From Bispira polyomma (Eukaryota), in assembly GCA_965649765.1 (NCBI GenBank), contig OZ287758.1, positions 39,990,001 to 40,054,000 on the forward strand: a stretch of DNA of 64,000 nucleotides, given 5' to 3'. The notes under the pieces were generated by a model that was not told the origin of the DNA, did not search any database, and saw only the letters and a program-made list of their open reading frames with translations. This document shows, in pieces, positions 14,842-39,445 of this stretch. The first letter of the stretch is position 1. Each line of letters begins with the position of its first letter. The position numbers were made by a program, and so were the translations under genes.

Positions 14842-17800
14842 ATGGATACCATACTATATTTAGGTAATACTTACTTTGTGATGATGCCATTCAAGTTTGT
14901 ATCAAACAATATTATAATTATTTTATGCATTAAGGAAAACTTAAGATAAGTGTTGTGTAGCCAATATCAACACTCTTAGTATCGAGAAATTACCATTTAA
15001 AGATGGTTTTTCTTTAAGAAAATGGGCACTCTATACTAAGAAAATAAATTTTTTATGCAAAAAATATAGTTTTGATCTGTCCAAACAGGAAATGAAAGTA
15101 TTTGTAAATTAATTTAAATGTGAGTCCAATTGTCTTAAAATCAATTAACAGTAATAATAATAATCCTAAAAATGTATAATTTTCTTGATGTTGACAGTTC
15201 TTAAGATCAACAAATTCTCAATGATGTCATTTTTAATCAAAGACAAATGCAAACATCTGGTAGTTTTTACGCATAAATACAAAGTTATGAAGAGCCTGTT
15301 GTAGTCAAGATTTCCATGGACAAATCAACTTATTTGTCCAATAATTCAACTAATTTGTCTGCAACCACAACAATGTTGATGGTACATTTTATTGTGGCAT
15401 GTTATTATTTTTCAACTTTACAACAGACTGCAGGTATCTTTGAGATTTGACCTAAACAGGTTTTAACTGGGTATGTATATACCAATAAATACTAATTACA
15501 TTTTCTGACTCGAGTTTTGCATTTAATCTTCAACTTTCCCTGGTGAACATAAGGAATGTTATTGTATTTCTAACAAACATATTATCATGGTGATAACATC
15601 CTTGGGCAAGATGTAAACACGCTCTTGCCTAGTGGTCTGGATGACCACTTAAAATTGTGGTCCTCTAACACTGAGTCCTGTCTCCAGTGGCAGGTTAAAG
15701 ATCCTTAGGGGTGTGGATGAATGGTCCTCTTCAAGCCTAGATTGGCTTCCCTAGTGGCTGCCCATGAGCTCGCTATAACAAATATCATATGTTGTGTTAT
15801 GGTTTTTGACTTCAGCTTGCCTGATGCTATTCCTACAAATAGTGGTTGCCATGGTTACCAGCATGAGGTTACCTAACCAAATTGTGTGTGTTCAGACAGA
15901 TAACCCATCAGTAGAACTGCCCTGCGGTGATCTAGTAAATCCCCCACACATCAGAGTGAGGGAATGGGCCAGGTATCTGCCAAATGAAAAAACGTTTATT
16001 ATCATCTTAGGGCCTCCAAATGATCACTATGACAGTGACTATATAACCAAAGTCAAATATGAGATGACTGACACGTTTTCCATGGTTATTTCTCAAGTAC
16101 AGTTGTCTGATGCTGGATTGTACATGTGTCAGTCCATAACTGGTCCCAAACCACAGGCTTACTATGTGATGCTACACGTACTGGGTAAGTGTCTACATGT
16201 GTTTTTGAAATGATTTAAATTTAAGTCAGTTTTTACGTCGCATTCAACAGCTTAGGTCACATCGCGATGGCCAGATTTAATGGTGGAAAAACCAGTGCTG
16301 AAGCACACTGTAAAACACCAACCTACAGCAAGTACCTGACAAACTTTCCCACATGATGGATTAGTGAAAGGCTAGACCAAATAATCTGTCCCTATTTAGT
16401 GAGATTCCTTGATGTTATTTTGATGACAGACTCACGAAAAGGGACAGAACAGCCACCATAAGGAAAACATTGTAAATTTACCCTGACGTAACATGGCCGA
16501 CAGTGTTGTACAAAATGATTTTGGTTTAGTTTTTATATTAATTCATATGTACCAGCGCACAAAGACTAACACCCATTAAGGCCAGGTACCTATTTATACA
16601 CCCGGGTAGAAAGGGACAACTTTGTGTAAAGCACCTTGTCCAAGGGTACAATCTCCGGGCATGCAGCAAGAATCAAACCAGGCCTCTGAGATCACTCAGA
16701 TCCAAAGACTGACATTCTAACAGCTAGACCACGGAGACTAGTTTGCCTTTCAGAATATTCCTCAAATAAAAATGGTATTTCAGTATGAAATATTTGTTTC
16801 TCAGCCAATGATAAAGTCTGCTCCCAGATGACTACCAGTATTCCAGAGACTTTGAACATCCAGCCCAGGGATGGTCAAACCACAGAGAGAGAACTGACTC
16901 AAAGGATATGTAAGTGTTATAAAGAACAGCTCAGGTCGATTGCAAATTTAGTCCCTCTTGAATCTACTAAGCTAGGCTGTAATCGGTTAACACATACGGT
17001 AAAACAGTAAAAGCACAGGGGAGTAGCCAGGATTTTTCATCTGGTACTCCCAAATTAAATCAATATAATATGTTCGTTTTTATGTGCTACCAAAAATTCA
17101 ATTCGTGGGGGAAGGGGTGGGGGGGGGGGGGGGGGGGGGGGGGCATCAAGGTAATATTTTGGTTTAATTGGAGGGTACCAACATTTTTTTTATTTAACAA
17201 CAGGAATCTATGTTACTACTAAAACAAACAGATTAAAACGAATTTTTATTTATTTTTTTTTTTCTTGTCATTAAATTGGTACGCCTGGGCGTACTGGCGT
17301 TAATGGTAGCTACGCCCCTGTAAGCATCCATATTAGAGTGAACACTCGTGGGATCAAGTCAAATTGTCCACTGAAAAGAAGTGTTTCATATTCAGAAGTT
17401 ACTGTACAATTCACTAGTATCAAAACAGAACCATGAATGGAATCGAATTTGGGATCATTGAAGTTATGCTGTATACTTATATACAGATAATCAAAGTATG
17501 GACCACAGAGGCTCTACAGTATACTAAGATAATAGAAGTTTGGATAAGCCTATGGTTCATTTCAGCCGATTTTTGCAAGCCGATGTCGGCCAAATTTATC
17601 GGTCATTACTTGATGTCATGAAGTGCTTCCTTTAATCTGATTCGATCTGACGTCTATTTTACCTTCAGATGTTAAGTGTCTGGGAGCTAAAAAAATCATT
17701 CGGCATGTCGGATGAAAGAATGGTACGTGCTACATCAGCCAACATTGGAACGACTCGAATGTTAATAAATTGGCCAACATCGGGATTAGCTCTCTCTTTA

Positions 17801-20800
17801 CTCTCTTGAGGTTACTGAAGGAAAGACAAGTATTCTGGATAATTATTTGGTCCTACAACTGGTGGGTAAGTGTGTGCAGGTGTTTATGTGATAGAACATA
17901 TAAGTCTTAAATCATTCAATGAAATAAAAAAAATACAGCACATGCAACCTGTTAGATACAAAGGTGTCATAGCCTGGACTTCCATGTTGCTAATCACGAC
18001 GTTGGCCGGTTTTATTTATAAGTGCATTTGGTCAGATGTTGGTCTACAAATGCATTCATGCAGCTGACAACAATATGTCCTGCATGTCGCATTCAATTTG
18101 AATTATATTTTAAAAACACGCCGATCTTTTGCTTCCTGGTCCAAATATCTGAAACTTCTGACAACATTTGATCTCATCCAACATATAATAGTGGCAATAT
18201 TGTAAGAGTATAGGGACAAAATATGTTCAAAATATTTCCGCTGACGTCAGCTGATATATATATATATATATATATATTTATCTGATACATAGAAGTGAAG
18301 GCTAAGGAGAATAAATATATTTGTTTGTAAATGTGTGTGTAGGTTTATAATCTGATAGCCCTCTATTGAGGTCTCAGTCGACTTTACAGTTTACATCCCA
18401 GGCTGGGTTCTTTCACTTGTCAACCAATTGTTTAGTCTCAGATCCCTCAGGAAGCATACCAGCCATGCAGCCACATGCGGCACACACAAACTAACACCCA
18501 TTAGTGACCAGGTACCTATTTATACACCTTAATAGAGAGGGACAACCTTGTGTAAAGCACCTTGTGCAAGGGTACAATCTCCGGGCATGCAGGGAAAATT
18601 GCACCAGAGCTCTGAGATCACTCAGATCCAAAGTGTGACACTCTAACTGCTGGGCCACGGAGACCATTCACTTATTAGAATATTCCTAAAATAGAAGTGG
18701 TATTTCAGTATGAAAGATCTGTTTTTCAGCCAATGATAGAGTCAGCTCCCAGATGACTACCAGTATTCCAGAGACTTTAAGCATTCAGCCCAGCAATGGT
18801 CAAAACATAGACAGAGAACTGGTTCAAGGGACATGTAAGTGTTATAAAGAACAACTCAGATCTATTGCAAATTTAGTCCCTCTTTAATCTACTAACCAAG
18901 GCTGTAATCGGAAATACAGTAACAGCATCCATATTAGAGTGAACACTAGTGGATTCCATTCAAATTGTTCACTCTAAAGAGTTGTTCTCTATAAAGAGTG
19001 AAGGCTAAGGTGAATATATGTATTTGTTTGTAAATGTGTGTGTAGGTTTATAGTGTTACAGTTTACACCCCCAGGCTGGGTTCTTCCACTTGTCAACCAA
19101 TTGTTCGGTCTCATGCGGCTCACCAAAACTAACACCCATTAGTGGCCAGGTACCTCTATATACACCTTGGTAGAGAAGGACAACATTGTGTAAAGCACAT
19201 TGTCCAAGGGTACAATCTCTGGGCATGCAGCAAGAATCGAACCAGAGCATTCAGATCAAAAGTCTGACACTCTAGCCGCTAGGCCACGGAGACCGTTCGC
19301 ATATCAGAATATTCCTAAAATAGAAGTGGTATTTGAGTATGAATTATTTGTTTTTCAGCCAATGATACAGTCAGCTCCCAGATGACTACCAGTATTCCAG
19401 AAACTTTGAGCATCCAGCCGAGTATTCCAGAGACTTTGAACAACCAGCCCAGTTATCGTCAAAACATAGACAGAGAATTGATTCAAGGAACATGTAAGTG
19501 TTTTAAAGAACAGCTTAGATCTATTGTAAATTTAGTCCCTCTTAAATCTACTAACCCAGGCTGTAATCAGTAAACACATACAATAAAAGCATCAATATTA
19601 GTGTGAATACTCGTGGAATCAGTCAAATTAAAGAGGTGTTCTCTATTGAACGGTTACTGTACAATTCACTAGTATCAAAACAGGATTATGAATGGAATCA
19701 AATTTGGGATCATAGAGGCTCTACTGTATACTCAGATAATAAAAGTTTGATTAAGCCTACACTTAGTTTCAGACGATTTTTGCAGACTGATGTCAGCCAA
19801 ATTTATCAGTCACAACTTACGTAAGTCACTGCAGGGCCGGACAGCATGACAAGTCAGTTGACAAAAATTAAGGGTTTACAGTAAAATATCTTAAAATTTG
19901 TTTACTAGCTTGATGACTAATCAGAGGTCACCTAGAAGAAGGTTTTGCCACCTTTCCTATAGAATTATCATATTTAATTTAGAAAGCTAAAGCATCAACA
20001 AGTGGAAAATTTCCCACCCTCCACCCAATTTAAGGGCTTTTAGCTGAGTAACCTTTTAATAAACTTGATTGTTCCATTTAACACGAACTATACGTGTATG
20101 TCCGGTCATTCAATAATGCACCATTATATGTTAATATATCCTTTTTAATAACCTTTACGGTTCTATTTAACACAGACTATATGTGTATGTTGGGTCAATT
20201 AATAATGTGCCCTTATATGTTGATATAATTTGATTGTTTTACTTAAGATATTTTACAGTATTAAAGATGTGTATTATATAGGGTTTTATACTTTTTAGTT
20301 AACCTGTGTATGCTTATTGGCAGTTATAAAAGTTTTTATACTTTAACATTTGTATGTACAGTTGATATAAAATATAATTGAATACTAATAAAATACTCCA
20401 AACTTGATTTAATCCAGTCTTATACCTTGGTTTGACCTACACTAGTCAGAAACTTTTAAGCGACTGATGTTATGAAGTGCTCCCTTTCATGAAATTTTCG
20501 TCAGATTTGATCTGATGTTAGCAGACGTTTTTTGTTTTAAATGTTATCAGTCTGGGAGCGAAAAAATCAAGTTGGCATATCTGATGACAGAAAACGCTAC
20601 ATCGGCCGTCATCGGAATGGCTCGAATGTTAATAAATTGGCCGACATCTGGATCAGCTGAAAGGAAGCGTAGTCTGATGGAGGTACTACTGTATGTGGAT
20701 AATTAAAAGTTGGAAAATAGAGATTCTACTGTATTTGGATAATAAAAAGTCGGAAAATAGATGTTCTACTGTATACTAAGATAATAGAAGTTTGGATAAT

Positions 20801-22844
20801 TGAGGCTGTACTGTATTTTATACCACTGTACCTATCTATTAAAATCTCTCTATTTTGTACTACAGCTAAGCTGGCCAAGGCTGGGTTTATGTGTCTGATA
20901 ATAGTATGTGTATTACTCTTCTGCTTCCTGTTGTTTGTCATCATTCTGTGGATGTCACATAGAAGAAACAAAAGGCATGCCAACAACAGAGGTAAGTCAT
21001 TTAATAATAGCATGTTTCCATACACACGTGTAAAAGTCCATCCGTGTACCCTCCTGTATGCACCTAAAAATCTTTGGCTCCTTATCTTTTTCTTCGTAGT
21101 GTTTCCATGGGTCTTTGTACATCATGCGTATCCAGTCTTGGAACCGACAGATTGTCAACGGCAGATAACTACGCTTTACAGCCAATTGTTCTGGTTCTAA
21201 TAAAATGTCTTAGCTTACAAACATGGCTTTCGTAGGGGTTTTCACACAGTCAACAACTGATTTATTTTCCACCAAGGGCCAGTAGAATTAGTCAGCCTAA
21301 GCTGTTGGAAATGACAAAAAAACTAAATTCTCATTCTACTCAGACGAAGAAGGGAGATTTTGGTCCTATGAGAACAGTCATGTAGTTGTAGGTTTTCAAT
21401 TGTATTTTTGTAAAAAAAGTGGGCTGTCACAAAAGTGTCAGAGGGTTTCTTGATATTTAAATTAAATTAATAATGTTATATAGGTGATAAGCTCCCCTCA
21501 AATTTCTGACCCACAAAGGTCATATGCAAAGTAAGCATTTCACCGAAACTTTGTGAGTATCTTAATATGTTACCAAAAGCAATACCACTAGTAGTACTAC
21601 TATATATTATATTTATTATAGTGACAAGTGTTTTGGTTGACACTCACACACTTAGTATCACACACCATTTTTAACGCATTTAAAAAGTTTCTTTGCATAA
21701 CAAATAAAAATTAGAATGCTAGAAATAATTGTATACATATGGTGTTTTTTTATTCTTTTTAAACACAGGGTCTTGCAGACTAACCAATGAGTTGTCTGTA
21801 AAGTACACTGGATTAGAAAAGAAATCAGCTAAATTTGCTACAGGTAAAATTTAAGTTGAATTTAATTAGTGCTTTTGGAGTGATTTTACTATTTTCGGCC
21901 AATTTACTAAGATGCATCTTCAGAAGCTATTTACTTAAGGGCGTTTTTGTAATGTTCGACCATATTGGATTTAACAGGAAATTACCTAGTTCTTTATTTT
22001 TCAAGATAATAGAAATAAGTAAATTATCTCTCACTAGATACTGCTATTACTGTGGCCAAAGCTCTTCAGAGTAACTGTCTTGACTATTGTAATTCCCTTC
22101 TGTTTGGAACTAATAAGTCACACATAAACAAGTTGAAGTCCATTCAAAACTATCTATGTAAAGTCATCTTTCGTTTGGGAATCCGTACTGATGCAACTCC
22201 ATACCTCCAGCAACTCCATTGGCTTCCAATTCACTATCGAATCCTGTTCAAAATGCACGTAACTACCTTTAAAGCAGTTGTCTCCCAACAGCCTCACTAC
22301 TAACTCTCCTTCAGCAGCCTTAAAAGGGTAAAGAGACTCTCTGTTTCCTCTAAAAAAACCACTAAGAGAGTCCTTCTTGGTCGCCGCTCCTATGCAATGG
22401 AAAAGCCTTCCAGTTAAACTTAGAATGCTTGAAACACTTTCTGGATTTCTGAAAAAACTCAAAACATATATCTTCAGGCTCGCCTTTCCTCTGTAGTCCT
22501 CTCCCCAGGTGGTAATGTATCCATCCTTATGACCTGGCTATTGCTTATTGATTTTTCTATTGGCTAATTGATTCTAATATTGTGCCTTAAAAAGATGCTT
22601 AGCATCAATAAGGCGCGTTAAAAATATACAATACAATAAGGAATAAAACAATAAAGTAGTTAAATAGGACACTGGTGTCTACCAAGTTGCATCCACTAGT
22701 CCCTAGGCCCAAGAGCTTCCGGATAATACAGTTCCTATGAAGTGAATTTGTTCCATTCTAAACTATCCCCTAAGGTGTCTGTATAACTAAGACCTACTTC
22801 TTTTTACAGATAATGATTACGAAACCATCAAGGAAGTACTTTAA
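14842..22844 (+). CDS. IgR-1: single V-type Ig-domain type I membrane receptor with ITIM. Exons: leader 14842-14863 or 15373-15433; V 15843-16184; stalk 16805-16909, 18730-18834, 19359-19493; TM 20866-20991; cytoplasmic 21769-21843 and 22810-22844 (stop)
   Basis: All internal exons are AG/GT bounded and phase 1-1. V-set motifs ELPC, REWAR and SMVISQVQLSDAGLYMC; hydrophobic TM followed by RRNKRH; tail motifs VKYTGL and NDYETI. Confidence 0.85.
15843..16184 (+). CDS. IgR-1 V-type Ig exon
   Basis: CAAATAG| acceptor and CTGG|GTAAGT donor; B-strand Cys, C-strand Trp, DxGxYxC. Confidence 0.92.
16560..19295 (-). mobile_element. Three CORE-type tRNA-SINE copies (~16560-16740, 18360-18665, 19055-19295), one upstream of each stalk exon
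   Basis: Minus strand CTCCGTGG(C/T)C(T/C)AGC A box, GGTTCGATTC-like B box and a GTACCCTTGGACAAGG...GGTGTATAAATAGGTACC CORE-like segment. Confidence 0.7.
17016..17320. mobile_element. MITE (hAT-like termini)
   Basis: Termini CAGGGGAGTAGC / GCTACGCCCCTG; absent from the paralogous stalk repeat near 18925. Confidence 0.75.
20866..20991 (+). CDS. IgR-1 transmembrane exon
   Basis: SKLAKAGFMCLIIVCVLLFCFLLFVIILWMSHRRNKRHANNR; TACAG| acceptor and |GTAAGT donor. Confidence 0.9.
21769..21843 (+). CDS. IgR-1 ITIM exon
   Basis: 75 nt, phase 1-1, strong polypyrimidine tract; reads GSCRLTNELSVKYTGLEKKSAKFAT. Confidence 0.75.
22066..22635 (+). mobile_element. L2-like LINE 3' fragment
   Basis: LDYCNSLL...LHWLPI motifs; 3' end GATGCTTAGCATCAATAAGGCGCGTTAAAAAT. 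Confidence 0.85.
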
Positions 22845-25800
22845 GATGGATCTGAAAGAACAGCAGAATCAGTAGGTAAGTATTTATTTATTTTAATATT
22901 TTATGTTTAACGTCGCTTTCAACAAGGTGACATTTAAGGAACCCAAATTAGACGTGGGAGGGGCGTGTGTTACCACTAAATCACCGAGGCCCCACCACAC
23001 CCCTAACCAATCACCCACTTTCTCTTTAGAGTTAATACAGAAACAATTTATCACCACCTTAAACACATTGTGTAACTTGTAGCATTTTCCCCTTTCATAT
23101 TCGTCAACAAATAGCTATTTAGAGTCAATAAGGAGAAATTTAACGGGACATCAAACACAATTTATGGTTTTTACCAACAACATGTGAGGATAATAAAAGC
23201 ATTGACAATTTTTTATGGATGAAAACCGTTCATATTGATTCTGAGAATGTTTAATTGTATTTTTTTATAATTCCAGTCATGTAGTTAACTACTTAGGTGT
23301 AGAGAAAGACAGACTGGCTGTGTTGACTCTTGGTAGAACAGATGAATTACAAAAGAATGGACTGGACTTAATCACTGTGTATTTTTTGTTTCTTTTTAAA
23401 GGATAAAATTGTAAATTGCTTTCAATGTATTTAACATTCAAAGACAAACTATGACCCATATTCTCCAAAAAAAGTCAAGCTCGAAAATCAGTTTAACTCC
23501 TGTATGTGGAAGTAACCTACACTTGTGACCCTGTTGATTCCTATAGAGCTTCAGTGCTGACATTAATAATTACTGTCAGATTTGATGTTATGCTATCACT
23601 ATAGATAGGGAGATACCTTAGATTAGAGGTTGAGTTTCTGTTGAGTTTGATTTGGTTTGGAGAATACAGTCTCATTTCTAGAAAGCTGCCAAGCTTTGTA
23701 ATGTGTAGTACATTATGTGTATAATAGTATATGTAAAAAACTGATTAAATAACAAACTGTTCTCCACATATGCTATCCATGATTGTATTCTAACATTTAT
23801 ATTTTTACTGACGTAGTTGCTAATATATTATGTTATTGTATATACTATTACGTGAACACAAACATTTTTTCTGTGAAACTATAGGACCTACAGAGGTGCT
23901 GATTTTGGAGAGATAACTTGACATAGTCAGGATCCATGATTGTGAAAATAAGTGATAAACATTGGTTGTTACACAAAAACAGATTTTAAAAGGGGGATCC
24001 CTAATTCCCACCATGGATCAACATATACTTGGGTGTATGGCACCATTAATTGACTAGGTCATCTGGATCTATATGTACATTAACTTACTACACTAAAAGT
24101 GTTCTTGAAGTAGTCTTATCTTTCCTGTACAATCAAGAATGCTTGAAGGGATTAATTAATAATGGTGCAGGTAATTACCTCACTACCTAATTTCTATTTA
24201 TTCTCATTCACAAAGAGATTAGATCCTGAGAATTGCCGTGGAAATTGGATTAAGGTCACTTTAATTACCACAAAAAAAAAAATCATTCCTTAATTTGGCT
24301 CAAGAAATTTAATGGACTGGTCAGATTTGATCTAATCTCCTGGGTTTATGTTCAAGTTGGATATCCTGAGGTCCAAATTGTATGTCAAATTTTGTGTCTT
24401 AATCATTATTCAGATTTGATCTATAATCTTGAGGGCAAGGTCAAAGTGGTCAACTTGTGACACGTTCAAAATAATGTTCAACATAATAGAGGTGTAGTAT
24501 CCAAGTGTAGATTTTGTGTTACCTATAGAATATATTCCACTTTTAAAACCTGCAAGAATCCAGTTTCATAGACCTGCTTTTGTTTTCTTCTTTTTTGAAA
24601 ATATTATTACATTTATTTATTATTTGTATTTTGCTTTTTGCATGATTATGCTTTCCTCTAGATAGGGGGTGTACAGTGGGAGAACCATGGTAACCATGGT
24701 TACATCGTGTTGACTAGGTAATCTCAGAACTTACAAGGATTTCAGCTTTCATATTTGGAATACATATGGAGTCTGTTTCAGTGATGGTCCATTTGTAATT
24801 TGGTATTAATACAGCTAGAAATAAGTGAGAAACAGCCATTTTCTGTTTTGGGGATCGTGAGCTTTCATTGAAGAGTCCATTACCGTCTATTTTCGGTATT
24901 TTGTTTGTAGTCAATTTTCCATCTTCATGGAATAAATTAACTGAGTTCATCAACCGTTTCATTAACAAATAGTTTGGCTGTTTTGGTGAATAAAAGTAGA
25001 ACACAAAGTAAGGTCAAGTGATCTTCCGAACATGTGCATCAATACCCTCATGCTAATTTATTCCCACAAAGACGCAAAATTAATGAGACAGCAATTTTAT
25101 AGCATATGTCTTGACACGGGCCTGTTTTCGACAGAATAATCAGTTCTGTATTTGTATTATTTTGTATTATCGCCCACTGAAGACCACTGTGCTGTACTGT
25201 ACTCGCAAATTTCGGGATATTGTAGGCACATGCACAGTCTTCATAAAGCCATACCAAATAGAAGCAAGTATCCTTTATCTGTTTAATATATAATTTTAAT
25301 GAAAAATATATAAGTAGATATAGTTCTCGAAATCGATTTTGACCGTTAACTAGTGACTGGTCTACTATTTTCGGACTTGTCAGTAACTTGCTTTGTGGTT
25401 GCATTATTATGATATTGCCCCCATGCCATTCTCCTCTTGTTACTTTCTTGTACTTCAGTATTGTTTCTTTTAGAATCTAATATTATTTTTTTTTTCTTTC
25501 ATTAAATGTATTTCTTTCTTTTTTCGACAATTGTATCTTGTTGTGACTTTTAGTATCATATAGTGGAACATGTTATTCTTGAATAAATATAATGCTAAAA
25601 TCTGGTTTTAGTTTAGTTTTGACACAATCTGGTTTTGTTTAAACATATTAACTTGAGATTGAAAATTGGTAACCTTAATTATCTTGTATAACTTACTAGA
25701 AATGTAGACAGACTGTAGGTTAGAAAATATTTTATATTATTTTACAAATAAAGATTGCCTCAAACATGAATAACCCAAAAGCCACATTCAACAGTAGCAG

Positions 25801-27159
25801 AAACCAGTGCTGAGGCAATGTAAACGTTCCACCTGTGGCAAGTACCTGACAAAGTTTTCTGCATAAAGGAAAGAACAGAATCCACATTGGCAAGAGGCCA
25901 GTGATTATTCCCATTCTGTTCCAAAGGTGGTAGCAGTTTTTTATATAACTGACAGCTTCTTCATTTTATTCCAAATTCAATTCATTGAGGGATATAGACT
26001 AAAAATCATAATGCCCTCATGGAAGGACCTTGCACAAGGTCTACCTGAATGCATGAAAACCAAAGGTTTGTGAACCTAACTTTAATCTGGGTGATTACCT
26101 TTTAAGGCCATAAACCGTTGCGAAGTGTCAGTTTCAGGGCTATAGCCTAAAACATTTGACATGTATCTATTGTGGTTATTGTATTGTGAGACGTTGATAA
26201 ATATACAACCCTATAGTACCATATAGACTTCTTTATCAGTGTAAATTTTGTTGTACTTACAATGCACATACACCATAATACACAAGGAGATTGACTCTTT
26301 TTATCAGCAATATATTTACACATATCTTAGTTCAGATCATCTTAAGCACTAGCCTTGCTGAAAGGCTGATGGTTGTTAGAAAGGCTTATTCAATTTGGAA
26401 CTAAATCAAAATTTATAATACTATAATATCCCCTTTTTTCTAAAAGGGTTTGATTCTTAACCATAGGTCAATGTAATGTACACATGCTGATTCACATTCT
26501 TACATTTTCATACAATTACCCAATACAAGTCAGTATTGTTACCATTTTTAAACAAGGCCTCGAGAAGAAGAGGTGTTGTACCAATGTCCAGAATAGTTTA
26601 GTGTAATACCCTGGCATTTAGTGACCTCTTGAAAAAGGGGTGTGAGGCCGAGGGGTTTTATTAAAGTTTTTTTTTAGAAAAATTACAGTGCATATGTTTA
26701 ACATCATGTATTTATATGAGTAACGGCTATTTTTTACTGGCTAAAAGGCGACATTTTACATTAATTTACTTAAAATAAGCACGTTATTATGCTGAAATAA
26801 ATGTATACACATATTTAGAATTAGTTGCACAAAAACAACCCCCGCAAGTTGTTGTGGACAGTTTTATAAAGGATGTCATATACTTGCCTCCCTGCATTAG
26901 ACTTATTTTAAAACAGTTCTATATTTGCCTCTGTACATTGAACTTTTAAGTTTAAAACAGGTGTATTTGTTTGTGTGTTCTATATGTATATTTATATGCA
27001 ATGGATAATACCAATATTACAAACAGAAGACTTGTGGCAGAGACAACTAATCAACTAAAGACAGTTGTAGAAAAGCACCCAGATGTACCTAAAGGGGGTC
27101 TGGTTGTAAAGGTATTGTAAACTATCTGGTATTTTTAGTTATTATTCTACAATTATGAT

Positions 27160-27478
27160 CTTCTACGCGTCTACTCAAAAGCCAGTTAAACAGTTTAGTT
27201 ATAGCTTTGCTTTTGATGCTTCCATTGTTTGGAATGCTCTTCCTGATGTGATTTGTGCATCCCCTCTCTAGCCTCTTTTAGAAAGCAGCTTAAAACCCAC
27301 CTGTACACCAAGGCATATCACCTTAGTCTTAATCATTCCTTGGTGTTCTCTGTGGTGCCAACCTTTTTTCTGTCCTTAGATATTGAAATTAGATCACTCT
27401 CTTGGTGCTGTTGTGCCTTAGAGTCCCCTTCGTAAAGGGGGAGATTAAGTGCTATAACAGTCAAATTACAATTACAAT
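27160..27478 (+). mobile_element. L2-like LINE 3' fragment in ADH-2 intron 1
   Basis: SFAFDASIVWNALP...LASFRKQLKTHLY; (ATTACA)n-like tail. Confidence 0.75.
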
Positions 27479-29342
27479 CTCACTCAAGAGTTTTAATGGG
27501 TTGTGTGTCATAGGCCACTGTTGTTTTTGGTATTGATGGAAAGCTTGGACTTCAGAAATGATAAATCTGATGTGTTTTTTTAAAGCTAGGCGTCATATCT
27601 ATAAATATGTGAATTTTGTCTTGACACAAACAGCATATTCAACTTCTATAATTATAGCTATAGCAACAACAAAATTAGGTGGCATTCAGTTTACCAGACT
27701 TGTCTTTTAAAATCTCAGAAGTAATGAAGATACAACATTAGTTTGGCACAATAAATTTGTTTCGGTCTTTAAATGGGAATTATTATTTAAGCATTGCCTA
27801 AATATTTAATTAGAAATACACTGAATGGGAACGTTGTATGCATACTGGAGATAAATAACTAGTAACTCACTAAAATCAATTTGTGATCAGGCCATCATCT
27901 TGTGCTCATCAAATAATTTAGTTAGGTGCTCAACACTAGATCATTTTGTCATTATCACTTAATATGTTATGCTTACCAATTCATCTGTTAAGCATGACTA
28001 ACTAAAACAAAAAATTGCTGTGTTGACGTTTTTGAAGGTCACGAAGCTGCTGGTATTATTGACCGAATTTCCAATCAGTGTACTGACAGTGAGTGTTTTT
28101 ATAATATTGTTATTTTATGTATACTAATGTTGTTTTTCTGACCTATAATACAACGTCTTAGCTTAATCCAGGACTCGAGTATCAGCTTTCAACAAAAACA
28201 ACAATTTTGATTCTCAGTAATAATTATTGTGAAACACTACAAGGAAACGCAGTAGAAGTTGAACTTAGTTTAGTTATATATGTCGCTTTCAACGGCTCAA
28301 CTAACATTCATATTCTTAAACTTAGAAAATTTTCTTATCTAAGAATTTCTTATTTTTAGAATGAAATCATATTCACAAGTCAATTCTTAGGTGACAATTG
28401 TGAATAGAAATTATAATCATGTGACCACTGTTTACAATACCATCATCTCCAAATATGGAGAATAAGCTTTTAGTGAATACAAAAATTCTTATTCTTTCTA
28501 AAAAATCTGAAATGTAACCTGTTTTAATCCAGAGAGCCTGATAGTGGGAGATAGGGTAGTGATCTACAGCTGGGGCTGGTGTAGAAAATGTTCATACTGC
28601 TTGACTGGTAGTCAGTATTGTCAGGACAGAGCTTCTCCAAACATGCACGTTTATGGCTTAACAAGAGATGGAGGGTGAGTTACAATAATTTTCTTAGTCT
28701 TAGCCAATGAGATTCTTTGAAACAATATTTTGTTGCCAATCAAATTGATTTAGACAAAAATTTAAAAAAAAATTAGAACTTTTGTTTATACCAGCCCTGG
28801 TATATTTAATTGCTACTAGTAAATGTATGGAACCCCTTTTAGGACATATAAATATTTGTTTACTTACATCCTTTATCCCTCGTCATAGCAAGATAAATCT
28901 CATTCTTGCAACTTAATTATCTGAGACGATAGTCTGGAGTAAGTCATTTTGATGAGATAAACGATGCCTCGCATGCAAAACACAATATAATACAAGTAAC
29001 AGCGTAAAAATATGTGCCTCCATAGCAATGCAATAATAGTTCAATGTTGATGTTCAATGTTAATTATATTCAGGTTTTATTTTTTATTTTGGCACGTACT
29101 AGAAATGTCTGAATTGCCATTTAATTCGTCGTTTATTCCAATGATACTGCAATTTTTTTATCCAATACAGATATGTTTTCCAATTGGCCAGGTATTAAAG
29201 TTTGTCCGGGTTAGGTCTTGGAAACTGTGAGACTGTGAAAGTTTATATTTGGTACAAATATTTCTTAGTGGGTTTTTGTGTCACGGGCTGATTTCACCCA
29301 AATGCTGTGGGGTTTTGGCAAAAACTAGGACCTTTTGATCAC

Positions 29343-29456
29343 CAGGGGCCTATTCACAGAGGGACTTAGCCAAGTGTTAGGCTTAAATCAGTATACTATT
29401 GTGCCTAAGATTTAAGCCTAAGACTTGGCTGAGTCCCTTCTTGAATATGGCCCCTG
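29343..29456. mobile_element. Short palindromic MITE
   Basis: CAGGGGCCTATTCACAGAGGGACTTAGCCAAG...CTTGGCTGAGTCCCTTCTTGAATATGGCCCCTG fold-back. Confidence 0.7.
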
Positions 29457-30651
29457 ACCATTTAATTGACCTTATATCTAGTACCAGGATTTATGTACAG
29501 TAGTTTATTTATTGTTTTTGCATGCTCCCTACAGCAAGTTGGACAAGATAATCGGTTGTTTATTTTCCATTGACATAGTTATACATGTACAATATTCACT
29601 CATCACAGAACCACCCTAACATAATTAACATTTTTAACCCCAACAGAAAACTATCACTGGGACCTGAAGCAAATCTTTCGGGTTGTAAGTTACAGATAGC
29701 TGGAGTCACTAAAACACACACCACAGACTACTTCCAGCATTCAATAACAGCCATACATATAATTTTTAAACTAAGGAACTCAACTGTTCCAACAATTTTA
29801 TTTGTGAGGAACTGAAGAAAATTAAAATAACCTTTTGGATGTATTGACTGTTAGGCGACAACATAGAGGTGGAAATAGTTAATTAAAATCTAAATATCTG
29901 TTAAGGTTGGTATTTCTTTCTCTATTCTCTCCTCTTATTAGCCAATTTTATTTTGGTTTTTGGGGTAATAATGAAAGTCAGTGCTTATACAAGTGTGGGA
30001 GATTATAAGTAACTTTAAGTTACAAACAAAAGGTGTATAATTCCCCCGGAAAAAGTAAACTTGGTCCATTTCTATAGCATATGAACACCAATTACTTTAT
30101 ATTGATTAAAAACAATTATTTTCTGGTGAACTTTGTCCTTTTCTATGCAATGACCACCAATTACTATCATGTAGATTCCAGCAGTACACGGCTGTGGCTG
30201 ATCCTTTCTCTGTAGTCAAGGTCCCTGACATCATCACCTTGGAGAGAGCTTGTCTGGTACCTTGTAGTGGTATTACACGTTACAGTGGCCTCCTACAGAG
30301 TAAAGACAGTATAAAGACGGAGATAGGAATTACAGGTACTATAAGGCATTGTAAATAAATATCTAAAGTGAATACAGTCTGCCTAATTTAATACAATTTG
30401 AATATATCTTGACATTTAGTTTCAACTTGCAATTTCAACAAAATAAAATTACAACTGTCTCAAATTAATAACCAGCTTTACAAATTATAAGCATATATTA
30501 TTAACATAATAGAGTATCAATACTGATATACTGTTGTGTAGTAGACAAAATATAAAACTATTGTGTCAGGTCGAGCCAGGATCCTTCTTATGGGTGTAGG
30601 AGGACTCGGTCTTTGGGCCATAGAGTTTGCAAAGATTATGTATGGGGACAA

Positions 30652-30900
30652 ACTACCTGTTTGTGCCGCAGATGTCTTTGTAAGTGATATATCTAGTACT
30701 TGTTTGTACTACAGATGTCTTTGTAAGTGATATATCTATTACTTGTTTGTGCTACAGATGTCTTTGTAAGTGACATGTCTAGTACTTGTTTGTGCTACAG
30801 ATGACTTTGTAAATCATATGTCTATTACTTGTTTGTGCTACAGATGTCATTGTTAGTTATATCTAGTGATTGTTTGTACTTTAGATAGGTTTACAAGTGA
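30652..30900 (+). repeat. ~43-bp minisatellite duplicating an ADH exon end and donor
   Basis: TACTTGTTTGTGCTACAGATGTCTTT|GTAAGTGATATATCTA, about 6 units. Confidence 0.85.
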
Positions 30901-31559
30901 TGTTGCTTGTTTAAAAAATGTGTCCCTTTTAATAGGGAGAAAAATTAGACCAAGCTAAAGCAGCTGGAGCGGACATCTGTGTAAAGACTTCAAAAGAAGG
31001 TAGAGTGCTCGGACCATCGTCTCCAAAACTCTCGGACTAAATCACAACATATAATGTCTCCATATGTTCACAGTTACTGGTTATAGCTTTCTTAGCTAAA
31101 ATATGTATGTATAAGCCTTTTTGGTTTGGTGTAAGAGTAACTTCAGTCTTTTTTGTTGCACTTTTATAACTTTAATAAACCTATTATTAGGTAAAAAATG
31201 TTTGGTCCGGTTATACATTCAAGAATGTACCACGGATCAGTGAGCTAATACCAAAATCTATGTATTGTAATATGTAAATTGTAATATGCGCCTATGCGCC
31301 TTTGCTTGTTCCTATAAATGGGGAGGGACATGGGTCAAAATAAGTGTCAACTGGGGAGGCTTATAAAAGTCATCCATTGGTAAAAAGCATGAGAAGCATA
31401 AAATGTCTCGACTGGAAATAGATCCACAAAGTCTCAAGAAGTATTTGCCTAGAATATTTTATGGTTCTTGATTTGTGCACAACCGCCACTCGGATCAACC
31501 TATGTGTGTCATAAAGGCCATTTGTTTATTGTAAATAACATTTTTAACTACCGCCTCTA

Positions 31560-32437: not shown

Positions 32438-32440
32438 GGC

Positions 32441-32670: not shown

Positions 32671-34033
32671 ATCAGGCTTTCAAAAAAAGTTAGTTTCACC
32701 TACAAATCAGCATATGAAATTGGACCTTAATTATCTCGATTTATTGAGATATTATCTCGGTCATTCAAAAGATAAATAAATAAAAAGGTTGGCCCTTGTA
32801 TAAAAATGTTGAAATTTTTTTTTTAATATTTGCCCTTATGTTTTTCCATAGTATACAGTGTTAAACATAATTAATATATTTGGATGACAGAATTTTTTCA
32901 CTAAAATACAAGAATGTACATGCTAATGTATCAAATTAATATATCATATCTATATCTAGCATTTCAAATGAAGTGCACAGACTTAAGTTGAAGTGTTTAT
33001 CACGATTAATGTAGTTGGGTGGCAAACAACATGTTTCTAATCAATCTGTACAAAATAGGACAGCAGCAATGGTGATTTAATGTGACAAAAAATTAATTAA
33101 CAAGTAAACGAGTGTTAAAATTGTTTTATTTACAAAAACAAATTTTATTTTAATGAAAATAATGTAATGAGTCTAGGGTATGGGAAGTGTAAGTTTTTAA
33201 CCTTTAAATGTGTTTTAATTCTACTGTGCTACTGTGAATGAGTATTCATTACTATGTATGTACATATAAATATGATATATTCATTTCATTTTCATATTTA
33301 CATGTACATTCTATATTTTCATTGAGCATGAATTCATTATCACTTGGAGGGAAAAAAAACCTTACATTGTGTTATTGTATTACACGAGCAATTATTATAT
33401 TGTGCCCCTACCCGGGTATTTTCTTATAGATGTAACCTCAACATGATTCTTATTAAAAAACCCATAAAATTACCTAAATGCACAATTGTTATTATATAAT
33501 CATATGACATAGAGTTTATTATTTAGATTAAATCTAAAAACTGCACAATGATAAAATAAATAAAACATCTTAAAGTGTTGGCTGATATTCATTTTGTCAA
33601 TGGTCTATATAGTACATTTTTAAAAAACGTGTTTTTTTGTATGCCCTTCATCACAAGTGTGTCAACATAATAAGTATTTGGGACATAAAAAACATGCAGC
33701 CTATATAAGTGTATACAATTCAAATATCATTTGTTGTGCATGTAGCAACTTCATCATCTGTTTGGTACTTCAATCATGTATATTAAACAGTATTACATGG
33801 CCATATTTCTATTCTTGTATGTCTGTAAAAATGTAAACCTCTATTATCTGAATAGATATAGCTATAATTATACATATAACTTATGTATAATTCAGTATTA
33901 TTCTGTATGCAATGACCACAACAAAATCCTGTGTTAACTACACATATATGCTTTGTACCTTAATTTGGTTTCATAAAAAATAATACAACAAAAAATAGGT
34001 TATTGCATGTGGTTTCGTATTTTAGGTTAAATA

Positions 34034-34465
34034 CACTGGTCAAAACAAAATAGGACTCAGTCATACAAGAGTAGGTAATTTTAAAAGTGTGGAGAATTTT
34101 AATTATTTTGATATGTATCAGTATTAACATATCCATTTTCCTTATTCTAAGCTCTTGTTGATTTTAATAAAAATTTCCTTAGAACATTACACAGAAAATC
34201 ATGTGATGGGCAAGAAATCTAAAGTCACAAGTACACAGATTTGTTCTTGACATCTGTTGTCCTGTGCTTGTGACTTTAGATTTCTTGCCCATCACATTCT
34301 TTGCTTGGTAATTGCTTAAAGAAATTTGGAGGGGGAAGCAACAATAGCTTGAAATAAGGAAAATAGATGTGTTAATATGAATACATATCAAAATAAATAA
34401 AATTGTCCACACTTTTGAAATTAACAACATTTATTTGTCTGAGTCCTATTTTATTTTAACCAGTG
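34034..34465. mobile_element. Tc1/mariner-type MITE with TA TSD
   Basis: TA|CACTGGTCAAAACAAAATAGGACTCAG ... CTGAGTCCTATTTTATTTTAACCAGTG|TA; the empty site GGTTAAATAGAAG is present in unit 1 at ~13150. Confidence 0.9.
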
Positions 34466-36228
34466 TAGAAGTTTTATGGCTAGATTGAAGTGCACTCATG
34501 CTTGCGTACTCATCCTTACGAAAGCTCGGCAGTATGAAAGTGTTGAGAATGATTTAATTGTACTCTTGCCACTGTGTGCTCATCCTTACAAAGCTTTGTG
34601 GTATACACTCGTGCTTGCGTACTCGTCCTTACAAAGCTTGGCAGTATGAAAGTGTTGATGTGTTAGATCGTGCCCTTGCCCTGAACATTATACAGTATGA
34701 GATCTTGCATACACTCTTACTAGTATTTAAAGAATGACATCATTTTATATGATAAAGCTGTTCATACATTTATAAAAACTTGTAAATACATACTCGTTTA
34801 CCCACACCGATATAACCATAACTTGCGATTTTTTGTACTAACTGCTTTCATTAAAATGTTATAGGGCCCACAGGATCAGAACTATGTAAATTGTTTGATA
34901 CATCATTTATTAATATTTACACACATTAGTGTTTCAATGTAAGGATTTAATGCAAAGCTTTATTTAAATATGATGGATCGGTCATCAAATATTAAAACTT
35001 TAACAATTAATTTTTTTCTGATGGAATTGATTGAAGATCCTGACATAAAAAAAATACTTTTTAAAGATAATATTTAAGTTATTATTTGAATTTATATATT
35101 TGGATTTATTACATGATGCTTACTGTTTTGTTGAGCTTGACATTATTTTTACAATGGCATTTAAATGGTAAACATTCCATTGAAAAATATCAGAGATATC
35201 TTAATTTAAGTTTTCACTGGCTCTTTTATTTCACTTATGTTACATTAATGCCGAAACATTACTACATAAACAAATGATATATGTTCTATTTACAAGCAGT
35301 TTCTATTCTACACACAAGCACATAATTAGTGGCACTTTATGTTGATTTATTTGCAATGTATAAGATGTATAAGGTATTCATTTAAAAATTATCCACAGTC
35401 ACATCAGGGAGGTAGTTTCATTTTCGTTTTTGGTATGTCTCTTATCCATTAAGCTTGGCAAATGTAATCTCCTCTTAAAATAATTAATTCAGACTTTTTT
35501 AACCTAGCTCGGTAAACTATTGCAGACCTCGAAATTTTACCTGGATGAAAATTTCACTAATTTATAATATTAAAAAAATTCTCCCATTTTTGCCGATATC
35601 TCCAGTTTATGCCCAGATGTTAGACGTTAGAAGATCACACAAGTTCTTGCCATCTGGAGTAAACGGCTCTATAAATGGAAAGGTGTGAATGTGACATTAT
35701 AAAATAGTTAAGAAATTACTTACTGGGGAAAACTTTCGCTAATGCAGTTAGTTGGGACACGTTTCAGTTAAACAATTGTGGGATATTTTTCTCTCCTATA
35801 TTTAGCTTGATCAATCTAATAGTGTAGTTGAATTTAGTGGTCCATTGAAGGATTGCAATGATAGTGGAATATTCCATCAGAAAAGAGGAAAAATTAAGGA
35901 CAGAAATTTAATGATATAGAAAAACATAACAGTAGTTGTTGGGGATTTGAATGCAAAATACTGCATCATTTGAAATAAGCACATTTTGAAAGTGGTGAAA
36001 GTTATTTTTAAAGTTACGCTAAAAGGAAATGGATATTGATTTATTTGTATTGCCTTAGAAATAGCTATTGGCCACATGCATTCAGAGCCAGGGCAGACAA
36101 TTACATGAATGACATGACACAGATTGACATAACTGATGTGAATATAGCATTCAATATACAGTTTACAATTACGAAATACGTACTTTATGTAAAAGCACAT
36201 TTTATCAGATATATTGTAATAAAACAAA

Positions 36229-39200
36229 ATGGATACCATACTATATTCAGGTAATACTTACTTTTTGATACTACAATTCAAGTTTTATCATTTGTATTAA
36301 ACATTGTTATAATTATTTTATGCAGTAAGGAAAACTTAATATTGGTAGAAATGTTATTATATTTAATTGGACAAAAAGGAAAAGTGACATCCGATTGAGG
36401 TTTCAATATCATACAGTACTGGCTCTTATGAAATCAGCACTTTTCTTAATATAGAGAAATTAATATTTAAAGATGGTTCCCTTCAAGGAAATGAATACTC
36501 TATATTAAAATGACTTTTCTTTTATGCAAAAAAAATGAATCAATCTGTCCTAGCAGGAAACAAAAATATTCCTAAATAATACCAAAAATATATAAATTCC
36601 TTTATGTTTACTGTTCATAACATCAACAAATTTTCAATAATGTCATTTTTATCAAGGACAAATGCAAACATCTGGTAGTTTTTATGCAAAAATACAAAGT
36701 TATGAAAAGTCTGTTGTCGTCAAGATAAACCGTTCCAGGGAAAAATAATTCAACTTATTTATCTGTCACCACATCAAAATTACTTGGTTTAAATTGGTCA
36801 CAATATCAATAATACTTGGTTTGAATTGGACAAAACATCAAAAATACTTAGTTTAAAACAAAATAATGGCTTGGCAACTTCATAATTTAATAAGGACATT
36901 ATCAGAGAAGTGACAGAAAACCTTGTCCAAAAACACTTCAAACTGGATATAACAACACAAGGCATTTGACATATGTTTTTGGATGTTTTGGGTTGCCGAT
37001 TATTTGATGTTGCCCCCTATTAAAAGGGCCTATGAGATGGCAGAATACATCTGATCATGTGTGTTTCTGCCAAGGCACTGAACCTACGGCTGAGATGACA
37101 TAGGCAGTGAGGTACTATCTCTGCAATTTGACTGCCTCTGTAGCTCGGACTTGGTCCTGTTAGCCCATTTCAGGCAACACCATCCCTTGCCTCCAAGCCT
37201 ACTCAACCACTTGATGGTTTCCACCATCTTCCTCGTTCAGTTGCCCTCCTCCATGCATGCCTAGGTAGCGGATCCTTATATGGTTGTGCAGTGTACAACA
37301 GGCCATCACTATGGTGGTGACTGTGTATGGCTCCTGCCTCGTGGTTGTGAGAAGACAGTTTTAAGCTCTTTAAAGGTGGTCTGATCCTCCAGCTCTAGCT
37401 CGGACATTAAGTTCTCATATTGCCCCTATTGGGACCTCCTTAGCAGCCAGCTCTGCACCCAAACACTCCGCTTTGCCCTTCTCCTATATATTCTCAGATA
37501 ATACCGCTACATGGCTAAGTTCAATTGAGCTCTAAACAACTGTACATGAATTGAAATGAAATAGTACATTTGTTATACTGCACTTATAGAACAGAGCCTC
37601 CCTTCAAATGCGCTTCCTCATGGGCAGCTACTATGACCATTTATCAACCTCTCTAAGGATCTTTAATGTGCCACTGGAGATATTACTCAGTGACAGAGGA
37701 CCGCCATTTTAGTGGTCATCTGAGCCACTAGGCAAACTTGTGTTCACATCTTGCCTAAGGATGTTATCCCACTAAAATGAAACTAGTGGCTGGTACCGGG
37801 ACTTGAACCGGGGACCTTCTGATCATTAGACCAACACCCTAACCACTAGACCACAGGGGATCACAATTGTTGACATACATCCACCAAGATATTTAAAAAT
37901 TTAATTCTTTCAAGAGCCATGACTTAATCAAACAGTTGTACAATGTGTCGCCATCAAAAGCTACCAATAATGAATAGAAGGTCAGTTTTTTGGAGCCTTA
38001 TATAGTGATCTGTCTAGGTTTCCGTATCTTCATCCCCTGCCAGATAAGTCAAGATATGTCATGATCCGGACCAGAAACCCCTCTGATCGGCAAATAGTAT
38101 ATAAGATTGGCTTCCATAGTGCCTGCCCATGAGTGTTGTGTTATGTTTTTTTGTCTTTAGCCTGCCTTGTGCTATTCTTACAAATAGTGGTTTCGATGGT
38201 TACCAGCCTGAGGTTACCTAACCAAACTGTGTGTGTTCAGACAGATACCCCATCAGTAGAACTATCCTGTGGTGATGTAGTAGTTGTAAATCCCCCAGAC
38301 ACCAGAGTGAGGGAATGGGCCAGGTATCTGCCAAATATAAACGAATTTAATGTCATCCTATGGTCTGCTTATGTCAACAATAATAGGGACTATAGAAGTT
38401 CTGTAGTCAAATATCAGATGACTGACACATTTTCCCTGGTTTTTTCTCAAGTACAGCTGTCTGATGCTGGATTGTACATGTGTCTGCCCATAGGTGGGTC
38501 CCAACCACAGGCTTACTACGTGATGCTACACATTCTGGGTAAGTGTGTTCATGCATTTTTGAATTGATTTGAATTAAGTCGTTTTCAACAGCTTAGGTCA
38601 CATCGCGATGGCCAGATTTAATGGTGGAATTAAAAAGTGCTGAAGCACAATGTAAACCACCAACATTCAGCAAGTACCTGACAAACTCTCCCACATGGAG
38701 GACAAACAGGATTAGTGAGAGGCCAGTGATTGTGAAGCATGTAGTCCACCATGGCCCCTGAGTGTACATGTGTTGGTGTGATGATATATACGAGAATTTC
38801 TGTTGTTTTGGGGTTTTCCAAAACCGAGGGTTATTAATGATATTTGGTGGTATAATCTAAAAAAAATCATTGCAATACAGTAAAACCTTCATTATCTGAA
38901 CTCAAAATTCAATTTTTATAAACTCTTTACACTTTTCTATTGCTTTATATTAAAATACCTTTTCTATTTTAGAAAAGTCCAATTATCCAAACAATACTTC
39001 CTGAAGGGGAGTTATAGCAGTTTATATTTGAGTGTAATATCTGCTAATATTTATGCAAGTAGTGATCTAAAAACCTTTTTTTTTGAAAGGGTGGAAGGTG
39101 GTGTGGTTTTAATTAGAGAGGGGTCCTTTATTACAGAAAAATATGGTATATAAGAATTATGTATATACCTGTACCTCCTTTTTACAAGGCCCCTGTTAGG

Positions 39201-39445
39201 ACATAAATATTTTTCAGGACCATGTCTATGAGAATAAAAACCTAGAAGATTTTTTGCCAATTTGGGTATTATGTGATGGAAAAGTGTGCACAGGTGTTTG
39301 TGTAATATTAAATATAAGTTTTAAATTCTTCAATTAAATTCGCAGATCCTGAAATCAGCCGAATTAATAGAAAAGTTTTTTTGTTCTATACTTTTATAAA
39401 GCAGAAAAATATATTTCTATTTGTCACATTTCATTAGAATCCTGT

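What the first reader, a model, noticed from the sequence alone, without database searches (positions are those of the whole stretch)
15843..38538. V-domain differences concentrate in CDR1/2/3-equivalent loops
Seen: framework stretches are nearly identical (RVREWARYLPN; MTDTFS; SQVQLSDAGLYMC; PQAYYVMLH) while loops differ strongly: GDLVNPPHI vs GDVVVVNPPDT, EKTFIIILGPPNDHYDSDYITK vs INEFNVILWSAYVNNNRDYRSSV, and QSITGPK vs LPIGGSQ. Indels are frame-preserving overall (342 vs 351 nt). Inference: diversifying selection on a ligand-binding face.
Basis: partly seen in the sequence, partly recalled or inferred. Interest (0 to 1): 0.75.

Follow-up and report, generated by a model that had tools for sequence, protein, structure and literature searches.

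The report
Paralogous V-domain receptors differing in loops
Two neighbouring copies of a small animal-specific receptor gene differ mostly in the three loops at the tip of their antibody-like domain, but the loops change at about the neutral rate, so selection for diversity is not shown.

Summary
The two exons are 342 and 351 nt, phase 1-1, V-set Ig domains. Of 113 aligned residues 34 differ, and these are clustered (permutation P=0.0003): 18 of 32 in the predicted BC, C'-D and FG loops against 16 of 81 elsewhere.

Each V exon is followed by its own transmembrane exon, so these are two tandem genes of a five-member family on one chromosome; one member is frameshifted.

Diversifying selection is not demonstrated.
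- Loop dN/dS is 0.36-1.05 pairwise and 0.8-1.3 by likelihood, never significantly above 1. The profile interval is about 0.7-2.0.
- M1a/M2a and M7/M8 find no positively selected class.
- Frameworks run at 0.3-0.4.
- Against this, loop replacement density is 2.5-3.5 times that of adjacent non-coding DNA in pairs that include gene 1, and the gene-1 branch shows omega 1.8-3.75.

Short patches shared by non-sister copies and a mosaic history also contribute. No RNA or allele data exist.

Verdict: a new member of a known kind, of moderate interest.

The parts
15843..16184 (+).
   Evidence: Open frame 15779-16210; Pfam V-set 29.1 bits, cut-off 26; ag|TGG...CTGG|gtaagt, 342 nt, phase 1-1; conserved pyrimidine tract and AG 27 nt upstream
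38188..38538 (+).
   Evidence: Open frame 38133-38564; Pfam V-set 21.6 bits, below the cut-off of 26; 351 nt, phase 1-1; 70% amino-acid identity to g1
15920..15958 (+). g1 BC loop (CDR1-equivalent), exon residues 26-38; g2 counterpart about 38265-38309, 2 residues longer
   Evidence: AF2 strands B 16-19 and C 33-39 in model numbering (= exon residue minus 6); 6-nt indel
16010..16057 (+). g1 C'-D segment (CDR2-equivalent, no C'' strand predicted), exon residues 56-71; g2 counterpart about 38361-38411
   Evidence: AF2 model: no strand between C' (44-49) and D (66-68), pLDDT block mean 51; most variable stretch; shared patches at 15992-15994 and 16048-16049
16136..16159 (+). g1 FG loop (CDR3-equivalent), exon residues 98-105; g2 counterpart about 38490-38513
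   Evidence: AF2 strands F 85-91 and G 100-106; QSITGPK vs LPIGGSQ
20866..20991 (+). Transmembrane exon of g1 (126 nt, phase 1-1): KLAKAG, hydrophobic span, HRRNKRHANNR
   Evidence: cag|CTAAGC...ACAGAG|gtaagt; translation; 41 of 41 residues identical to paralog p4
41746..41880 (+). Transmembrane exon of g2 (135 nt, phase 1-1)
   Evidence: Same splice signals and homologous translation; 83% nucleotide identity to g1
11664..24574 (+). First unit of the tandem segmental duplication (gene 1 with its flanks)
   Evidence: Collinear self-matches to 32717-47761 at 67-90%
32717..47761 (+). Second unit of the tandem duplication (gene 2 with its flanks)
   Evidence: collinear with the p3 locus at 82-92%

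Best explanation
The window holds two tandem paralogs (g1, g2) of a small, lineage-restricted family of type I membrane proteins. Each has one V-set Ig domain joined by a very short linker to a transmembrane helix. The family grew by repeated segmental duplication and recombination, in a birth-and-death pattern. The beta-sandwich framework is kept by moderate purifying selection (omega about 0.3-0.4). The BC, C'-D and FG loops are free to change in sequence and, in frame, in length (omega about 1). Differences therefore pile up there. Extra clustering comes from a burst of changes on the g1 lineage and from short patches shared between non-sister copies. Shown: the anatomy, the clustering, the rates. 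Inferred: that the loops form a binding face and that the paralogs bind different partners. Positive selection is possible but not demonstrated.
For: V-set domain: Pfam, AF2 pLDDT 80.7, Foldseek hits to receptor V domains. Own TM exon behind each V exon, and no other Ig exon in the window. Five paralogs on contig C11; the next relatives in the genome score only E=8.5e-9. No positively selected class in M2a or M8. Strictly synonymous divergence is equal in structural loops and framework (0.260 vs 0.264). All exon indels are in frame, against 14-22 gapped positions per 105-172 aligned nt of flank. Mosaic history: g1-p4 non-coding divergence is 0.11-0.17 from 14.0 to 17.8 kb but 0.047-0.09 beyond; the TM exon is 41 of 41 identical while V is 71% identical. 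13 of 25 informative sites conflict with the tree implied by the flanks.
Against: Loop replacement density is 2.5-3.5 times that of adjacent non-coding DNA in g1-p4 and g1-g2. A purely neutral loop should not exceed that, unless the exon is older than its flanks or local alignments underestimate flank divergence. An average omega near 1 over about 42 codons can hide a few positively selected sites, and five short sequences give little power. There is no expression evidence that any copy is used. The likelihood code was my own re-implementation, not PAML.
Confidence: 0.6

Rival explanations
1. True diversifying (positive) selection on a binding face: replacement changes in the CDR-equivalent loops were driven by selection for new specificities, at least on the g1 lineage.
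For: Loop replacement density exceeds non-coding flanks (0.308 vs 0.119, P=6.5e-6; 0.337 vs 0.095, P=7.8e-7). Variation falls on BC, C'-D and FG but not on the DE, EF or AB turns. Loop length varies in frame. g1's 161-nt loop-bearing segment is equidistant (74-77%) from all four other copies, and no donor exists elsewhere in the genome.
Against: Omega in the loops is never significantly above 1. M2a and M8 add nothing. The significant branch test uses a partition drawn from the same differences; with structure-defined loops P=0.18. g1 singleton changes in the loops include 5 synonymous against 0 in the framework, which selection on amino acids does not explain. g2-p3 shows no excess.
Confidence: 0.25
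2. A mutational origin: the loop differences come mainly from short-tract exchange between paralogs or clustered multi-nucleotide events, with frameworks and flanks partly homogenised. Under this reading the pattern reflects mosaic ancestry rather than selection on residues.
For: 13 of 25 parsimony-informative sites conflict with ((g1,p4),(g2,p3),p5). Three adjacent same-split pairs occur (P=0.0016): g1+p5 at 15992-15994 and g2+p4 at 16048-16049, both in or next to the C'-D region. A step in g1-p4 divergence at about 17.8 kb shows recombination within the gene.
Against: A PHI-like test and longest-identical-tract tests are not significant. With structure-defined loops synonymous divergence is not raised (0.260 vs 0.264). 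No donor was found for g1's loop DNA.
Confidence: 0.12
3. Decaying copies: the genes are no longer used, and the loops are simply the least constrained part of dying sequences.
For: p5 carries a frameshift in the A strand. No RNA run exists. Overall omega is high (0.54-0.60).
Against: Four of five V exons are open over 113-117 codons despite a synonymous p-distance of 0.20-0.35. All their indels are in frame. Framework omega of 0.3-0.4 differs significantly from the loops. The TM exon of g1 and p4 has 0 replacements in 97 sites. Splice signals are conserved.
Confidence: 0.03

Closest known systems
Teleost novel immune-type receptors (NITRs)
   Same: Germline-encoded, tandemly clustered multigene family of type I membrane proteins with an N-terminal V domain. 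V domains diverge strongly between members. The pattern is ascribed to recent birth-and-death evolution (PMC2442602: abstract passage seen and listing).
   Different: NITRs are described from bony fish (listings); this genome was called an invertebrate only by an earlier unchecked note. As I recall, NITR V exons carry a J-like FGxGT motif, and many NITRs have a second Ig domain and an ITIM. Here there is no FGxG, only one Ig exon, and the tail is unknown. No sequence relationship beyond generic V-set was found.
Germline V gene segments of immunoglobulins and T-cell receptors
   Same: V-set fold with Cys-Trp-Cys and a DxGxYxC motif. Paralog differences are concentrated in CDR1 and CDR2. A classic report of dN above dS in germline CDRs is recalled here (Tanaka and Nei 1989; from memory, no call).
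   Different: No recombination signal heptamer lies within 200-300 nt of the exon end. The G strand lies in the same exon, which ends at a splice donor leading to a TM exon. Hence no rearrangement. Here dN/dS in the loops is about 1, not above it.
[quoted passage not shown]
   Same: V-type domains in a non-vertebrate, polymorphic multigene family regarded as immune-type (PMC2632668: start of abstract seen in the listing).
   Different: VCBPs have two V domains plus a chitin-binding domain (same listing), and as I recall they are secreted. Here there is one V domain and a transmembrane exon.
Hydractinia Alr family (allorecognition complex)
   Same: Invertebrate cluster of membrane IgSF genes with an N-terminal V-set domain, many paralogs and pseudogenes (PMC9546547: abstract and outline read).
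   Different: Alr V-set domains lack the canonical sequence motifs and are followed by I-set domains (abstract). Here the canonical Cys, Trp and DxGxYxC are present and there is no second Ig exon.
Single-V cell-surface receptors such as CAR D1, 2B4/CD244, CD226, TREM2, PD-1
   Same: Best structural matches of the model (Foldseek TM 0.56-0.76, E about 1e-5).
   Different: Only 15-26% sequence identity. These are generic V-set resemblances, not evidence of orthology.

Membership tests
Pfam V-set (PF07686) / V-type Ig domain | Profile score at or above the curated cut-off (26 bits) | tested here: inconclusive
   g1 scores 29.1 bits (passes); g2 scores 21.6 bits (below). The two are 70% identical.
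Pfam V-set (PF07686) / V-type Ig domain | Conserved Cys (B strand), Trp (C strand), DxGxYxC (F strand) | tested here: met
   C27, W41, D89-A-G-L-Y-M-C95 are invariant in all five paralogs.
Pfam V-set (PF07686) / V-type Ig domain | V-type beta sandwich with extra C' and C'' strands | tested here: inconclusive
   AF2 pLDDT 80.7 predicts strands A, B, C, C', D, E, F, G. No C'' strand is predicted, and the C'-D segment has low confidence. Foldseek top hits are V domains.
Rearranging antigen-receptor V segments | Recombination signal sequence after the V exon; separate J segment | tested here: not met
   No CACAGTG or CACTGTG in 16100-16400 or 38450-38750. The exon contains the G strand and ends at gtaagt.
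NITR | J-like FGxG motif in the V domain (feature recalled, not from a call) | tested here: not met
   No [FW]GxG in either V translation.
NITR | Cytoplasmic ITIM or charged TM residue (feature from the PMC2442602 abstract listing) | not testable with these tools
   The cytoplasmic exons could not be defined without RNA. The TM exon shows no charged residue within the hydrophobic span.
VCBP | Two V domains plus a chitin-binding domain | tested here: not met
   One Ig-motif exon per gene, followed by a TM exon.
Genes under diversifying selection at a binding site (MHC-like criterion) | dN/dS significantly above 1 at the candidate sites | tested here: not met
   Loop omega 0.69-1.29, not different from 1. 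The M1a/M2a and M7/M8 likelihood-ratio statistics are 0.
Genes under diversifying selection at a binding site (MHC-like criterion) | Replacement rate above the neutral rate of linked non-coding DNA | tested here: inconclusive
   Met in g1-p4 and g1-g2 (P below 1e-5), not in g2-p3 (P=0.17). Exon synonymous sites also exceed the flanks (0.225 vs 0.119, P=0.015).
Genes under diversifying selection at a binding site (MHC-like criterion) | High allelic polymorphism at the same sites | not testable with these tools
   Three runs from one study and at most two samples give contigs identical to the g1 exon. The only variant contig is paralog g2.

The most novel reading that the evidence does not exclude
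This would be a non-vertebrate, germline-encoded family of single-V membrane receptors whose CDR-equivalent loops are diversified on purpose. Short patches would be swapped between paralogs, and bursts of replacement (as on the g1 lineage) would be fixed by selection. V modules would also be recombined onto conserved transmembrane and signalling modules, as suggested by g1 and p4 having identical TM exons but V domains only 71% identical. That would be a small germline counterpart of an antigen-receptor repertoire outside the jawed vertebrates.
Probability: 0.15. Interest if true: 0.65.

Novelty: new member of a known kind. Interest (0 to 1): 0.35.

Why it matters
V-type domains with variable CDR-like loops outside the jawed vertebrates bear on how antigen-receptor-like recognition arose. 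This family has canonical V-set motifs, a minimal architecture (V domain, short linker, TM) and no close relative in very large protein collections. Here, however, the loop-centred variation needs nothing beyond relaxed constraint on loops in a young, recombining gene family. That is the default behaviour of Ig domains. Its value now is as a documented candidate locus with clear tests, not as evidence of adaptive diversification.

Tried and rejected
Close homologues. The word-indexed search with the g1 V domain found nothing (it sees only proteins of 62-198 aa). The exhaustive profile search returned generic multi-Ig proteins plus five short unnamed ENA proteins that resemble the sister family on other contigs.

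Expression and splice proof. No RNA run holds the locus, so the leader exon and the cytoplasmic exons stayed undefined. Conserved blocks downstream of the TM exon gave no convincing frames.

Alleles. The laid contigs were identical to the assembly.

Other readings ruled out or left untested.
- Compensated frameshift as the cause of the loop-2 differences: rejected, the DNA alignment shows point differences.
- Two V exons as alternative exons of one gene: rejected, each has its own TM exon.
- Long gene-conversion tracts: not significant.
- External donor for g1's loops: none found.

Structure. The first AF2 model (pLDDT 56.3) was too weak and was replaced by a deeper alignment. The PDB sequence search and the ESM Atlas gave only generic V-set neighbours.

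Method limits. PAML and HyPhy were not available. I wrote GY94/F3x4 likelihood code for M0, M1a, M2a, M7, M8, M8a, fixed partitions and branch-by-partition models. These results are not cross-checked against standard software. Supplementary files of papers were not consulted.
Full report
WHAT IS THERE

The window has no N and is AT-rich (GC 0.29-0.43). It is G000:C11:39990001-40054000 of a 1.035-Gb, 75-contig genome. An earlier, unchecked note calls the animal an invertebrate.

All ten peptide strings of the finding are on the + strand at the stated places. The two open frames are 15779-16210 and 38133-38564.

Pfam calls them V-set: 29.1 bits for g1 against a cut-off of 26, and 21.6 bits for g2.

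A first AF2 model was poor (pLDDT 56.3). A second, built on 18 sequences, reached pLDDT 80.7 and pTM 0.76 with strands A, B, C, C', D, E, F and G. Its best Foldseek matches are V domains of 2B4, CD166, CD226 and CAR D1 (TM 0.71-0.76, 17-24% identity). A PDB profile search and the ESM Atlas gave only generic Ig and V-set neighbours.

GENE CONTEXT

Self-comparison shows a tandem duplication, about 11.7-24.6 kb against 32.7-47.8 kb.

Each V exon is followed by its own transmembrane exon, both phase 1-1 with cag| and |gtaagt:
- g1: 20866-20991
- g2: 41746-41880

Both encode a short linker, a hydrophobic span and a basic stop-transfer stretch. A scan of all six frames for Ig signatures found only the two V exons. 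These are therefore two single-V type I membrane protein genes, not alternative exons of one gene.

I analysed the exons apart and built no joined protein.

The exon therefore more likely starts at 15816 / 38161, which adds the hydrophobic core of a signal peptide.

The leader exon and the cytoplasmic exons could not be defined. No RNA run holds the locus.

THE FAMILY

The genome holds five such V exons, all on C11: g1, g2, p3, p4 and p5, 68-71% identical to g1.

The next best matches score only E=8.5e-9. They are a sister family of nine dispersed V exons on C5, C9 and C4, about 30% identical.

p5 has a frameshift in the A strand.

Outside this genome:
- The word-indexed search found nothing (it is length-limited).
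- The exhaustive profile search found generic multi-Ig proteins, plus five short unnamed proteins that resemble the sister family.

HISTORY

Flanks show a two-gene block duplication.
- g2's region is collinear with p3's at 82-92%.
- g1's region is collinear with p4's.

With the four intact exons, the tree ((g1,p4),(g2,p3)) is better than either alternative by 13 lnL units.

The history is mosaic. Non-coding divergence between g1 and p4 is 0.11-0.17 from 14.0 to 17.8 kb, but 0.047-0.09 from there on. Their TM exons are 41 of 41 residues identical with one synonymous difference, whereas their V domains are 71% identical.

IS THE CLUSTERING REAL?

Yes. 34 of 113 aligned residues differ between g1 and g2. 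The window-count variance is 4.51 against 1.75 in permutations (P=0.0003).

| Region | Residues differing |
|---|---|
| Structure-defined BC, C'-D and FG loops | 18 of 32 |
| Strands | 9 of 39 |
| Other non-strand segments | 7 of 42 |

The Fisher test of these loops against all the rest gives P=0.00025.

IS IT DIVERSIFYING SELECTION?

Pairwise Nei-Gojobori ratios:
- framework: 0.24-0.51

My own codon-likelihood code gives the following.
- M0 omega is 0.54.
- M1a against M2a, and M7 against M8, both give a likelihood-ratio statistic of 0.
Loop omega does not differ from 1.
- Four intact paralogs: loops 1.09-1.29, framework 0.29-0.38, and omega=1 is not rejected (P=0.28-0.71).

By the second criterion it partly survives.

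| Pair | Loop replacement density | Non-coding density | P |
|---|---|---|---|
| g1-p4 | 0.308 | 0.119 (surrounding HSP) | 6.5e-6 |
| g1-g2 | 0.337 | 0.095 (adjacent flanks) | 7.8e-7 |
| g2-p3 | 0.152 | 0.105 | 0.17 |

However, the exon's synonymous density (0.225) also exceeds the flanks (P=0.015). It does not differ from the loop replacement density (P=0.29).

The excess sits on the g1 lineage. It is 1.78 (P=0.18) with the structural partition. The p5 branch shows 0.09-0.24.

g1's singleton changes are 5 synonymous and 9 replacement in the loops, against 0 and 3 in the framework. That points to clustered mutation as much as to selection.

EXCHANGE BETWEEN COPIES

- 13 of 25 informative sites conflict with the flank tree.
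- Three adjacent same-split pairs occur (P=0.0016): g1+p5 at 15992-15994 and g2+p4 at 16048-16049.
- PHI-like and longest-tract tests are not significant.
- No other locus in the genome matches g1's loop DNA better than the four paralogs, which match at 74-77%.

ALLELES

Contigs of three runs (one study, at most two samples) match the g1 exon without a difference. The single variant contig carries g2's letters. There is therefore no polymorphism information. The same call shows that 15592-15743 and 16200-16560 are high-copy repeats.

FUNCTIONAL STATE

Several facts argue that at least four copies encode maintained proteins:
- Four of five exons are open.
- All their indels are in frame, while the flanks are gap-rich.
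- The framework is constrained.
- The g1 and p4 TM exons have no replacement.

CONCLUSION

The rates fit loops that are unconstrained (omega about 1) in a young, recombining V-receptor family. A g1-lineage burst and patch sharing are leads towards something more. Diversifying selection is neither shown nor excluded for a minority of sites.

COMPARISON WITH KNOWN SYSTEMS

The locus works most like teleost NITR clusters, which show birth-and-death evolution with highly divergent V domains (PMC2442602: abstract passage, listing). It is not a member of that family: there is no J-like motif and only generic sequence similarity.

It lacks recombination signals. It lacks the VCBP architecture (PMC2632668, listing only). 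It differs from Hydractinia Alr genes, whose V-set domains lack the canonical motifs (PMC9546547: abstract). The Tanaka and Nei report on germline CDRs is recalled, not seen.

One fetched protein (P0124) looked like a vertebrate TCR V region, possibly human, and was set aside unused.

Noticed in passing
window 14001-31000 vs L028-L031: g1 and paralog p4 are about twice as diverged in the 5' part (14.0-17.8 kb, p 0.11-0.17) as in the 3' part (p 0.047-0.09). Their TM exons encode identical peptides while the V domains are 71% identical. This suggests a recombination breakpoint, or V-module exchange, between the V and TM exons.
   Followed up: partly
L005 / L022 (G000:C11 about 39487500): Paralog p5 has a frameshift in the A-strand part of its V exon. 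Its TM-exon region appears partly triplicated in L023 (matches at 2414-2586, 2580-2671, 2750-2875).
   Followed up: partly
L007-L015, L037-L043 (contigs C5, C9, C4): A sister family of nine dispersed V exons, 60-84% identical to one another and about 30% to the C11 family. It has the same hydrophobic leader-like stretch in the same open frame. Five unnamed proteins from other assemblies resemble it.
   Followed up: partly
window 41990-42710 (short remnant at 21098-21135): A tandem repeat array lies just downstream of the g2 TM exon, with self-matches offset by about 88 and 171 nt. It is also present behind p3 and p5, and much shorter behind g1.
   Followed up: no
window 16555-16986, 18480-18911, 19118-19588, 41108-41298: Three copies of a roughly 430-nt non-coding repeat lie in the g1 V-TM intron (79-86% alike), and one partial copy lies in g2. 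The repeat is also present in the introns of p3, p4 and p5.
   Followed up: no
window 15592-15743 and 16200-16560: Sequences directly flanking the g1 V exon are very high-copy repeats in the sequencing runs (summed contig depth in the tens of thousands against about 10-80 for the exon).
   Followed up: no
window 43187-44497 (also 10535-11153, 22022-22637): An open 436-aa reverse-transcriptase frame (Pfam RVT_1, E=2.3e-30) lies inside the g2 gene. Older related fragments lie upstream of g1 and in g1's 3' part.
   Followed up: no
window 39449-39531 and 45025-45071: A dinucleotide (TA-type) microsatellite matches itself in both orientations in the self-comparison.
   Followed up: no
window 15953-15985: The 33 nt encoding RVREWARYLPN are identical in g1 and g2 and nearly invariant in all five paralogs. 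That is fewer synonymous changes than the exon average would predict. Possible causes are constraint at the nucleotide level or homogenisation.
   Followed up: no
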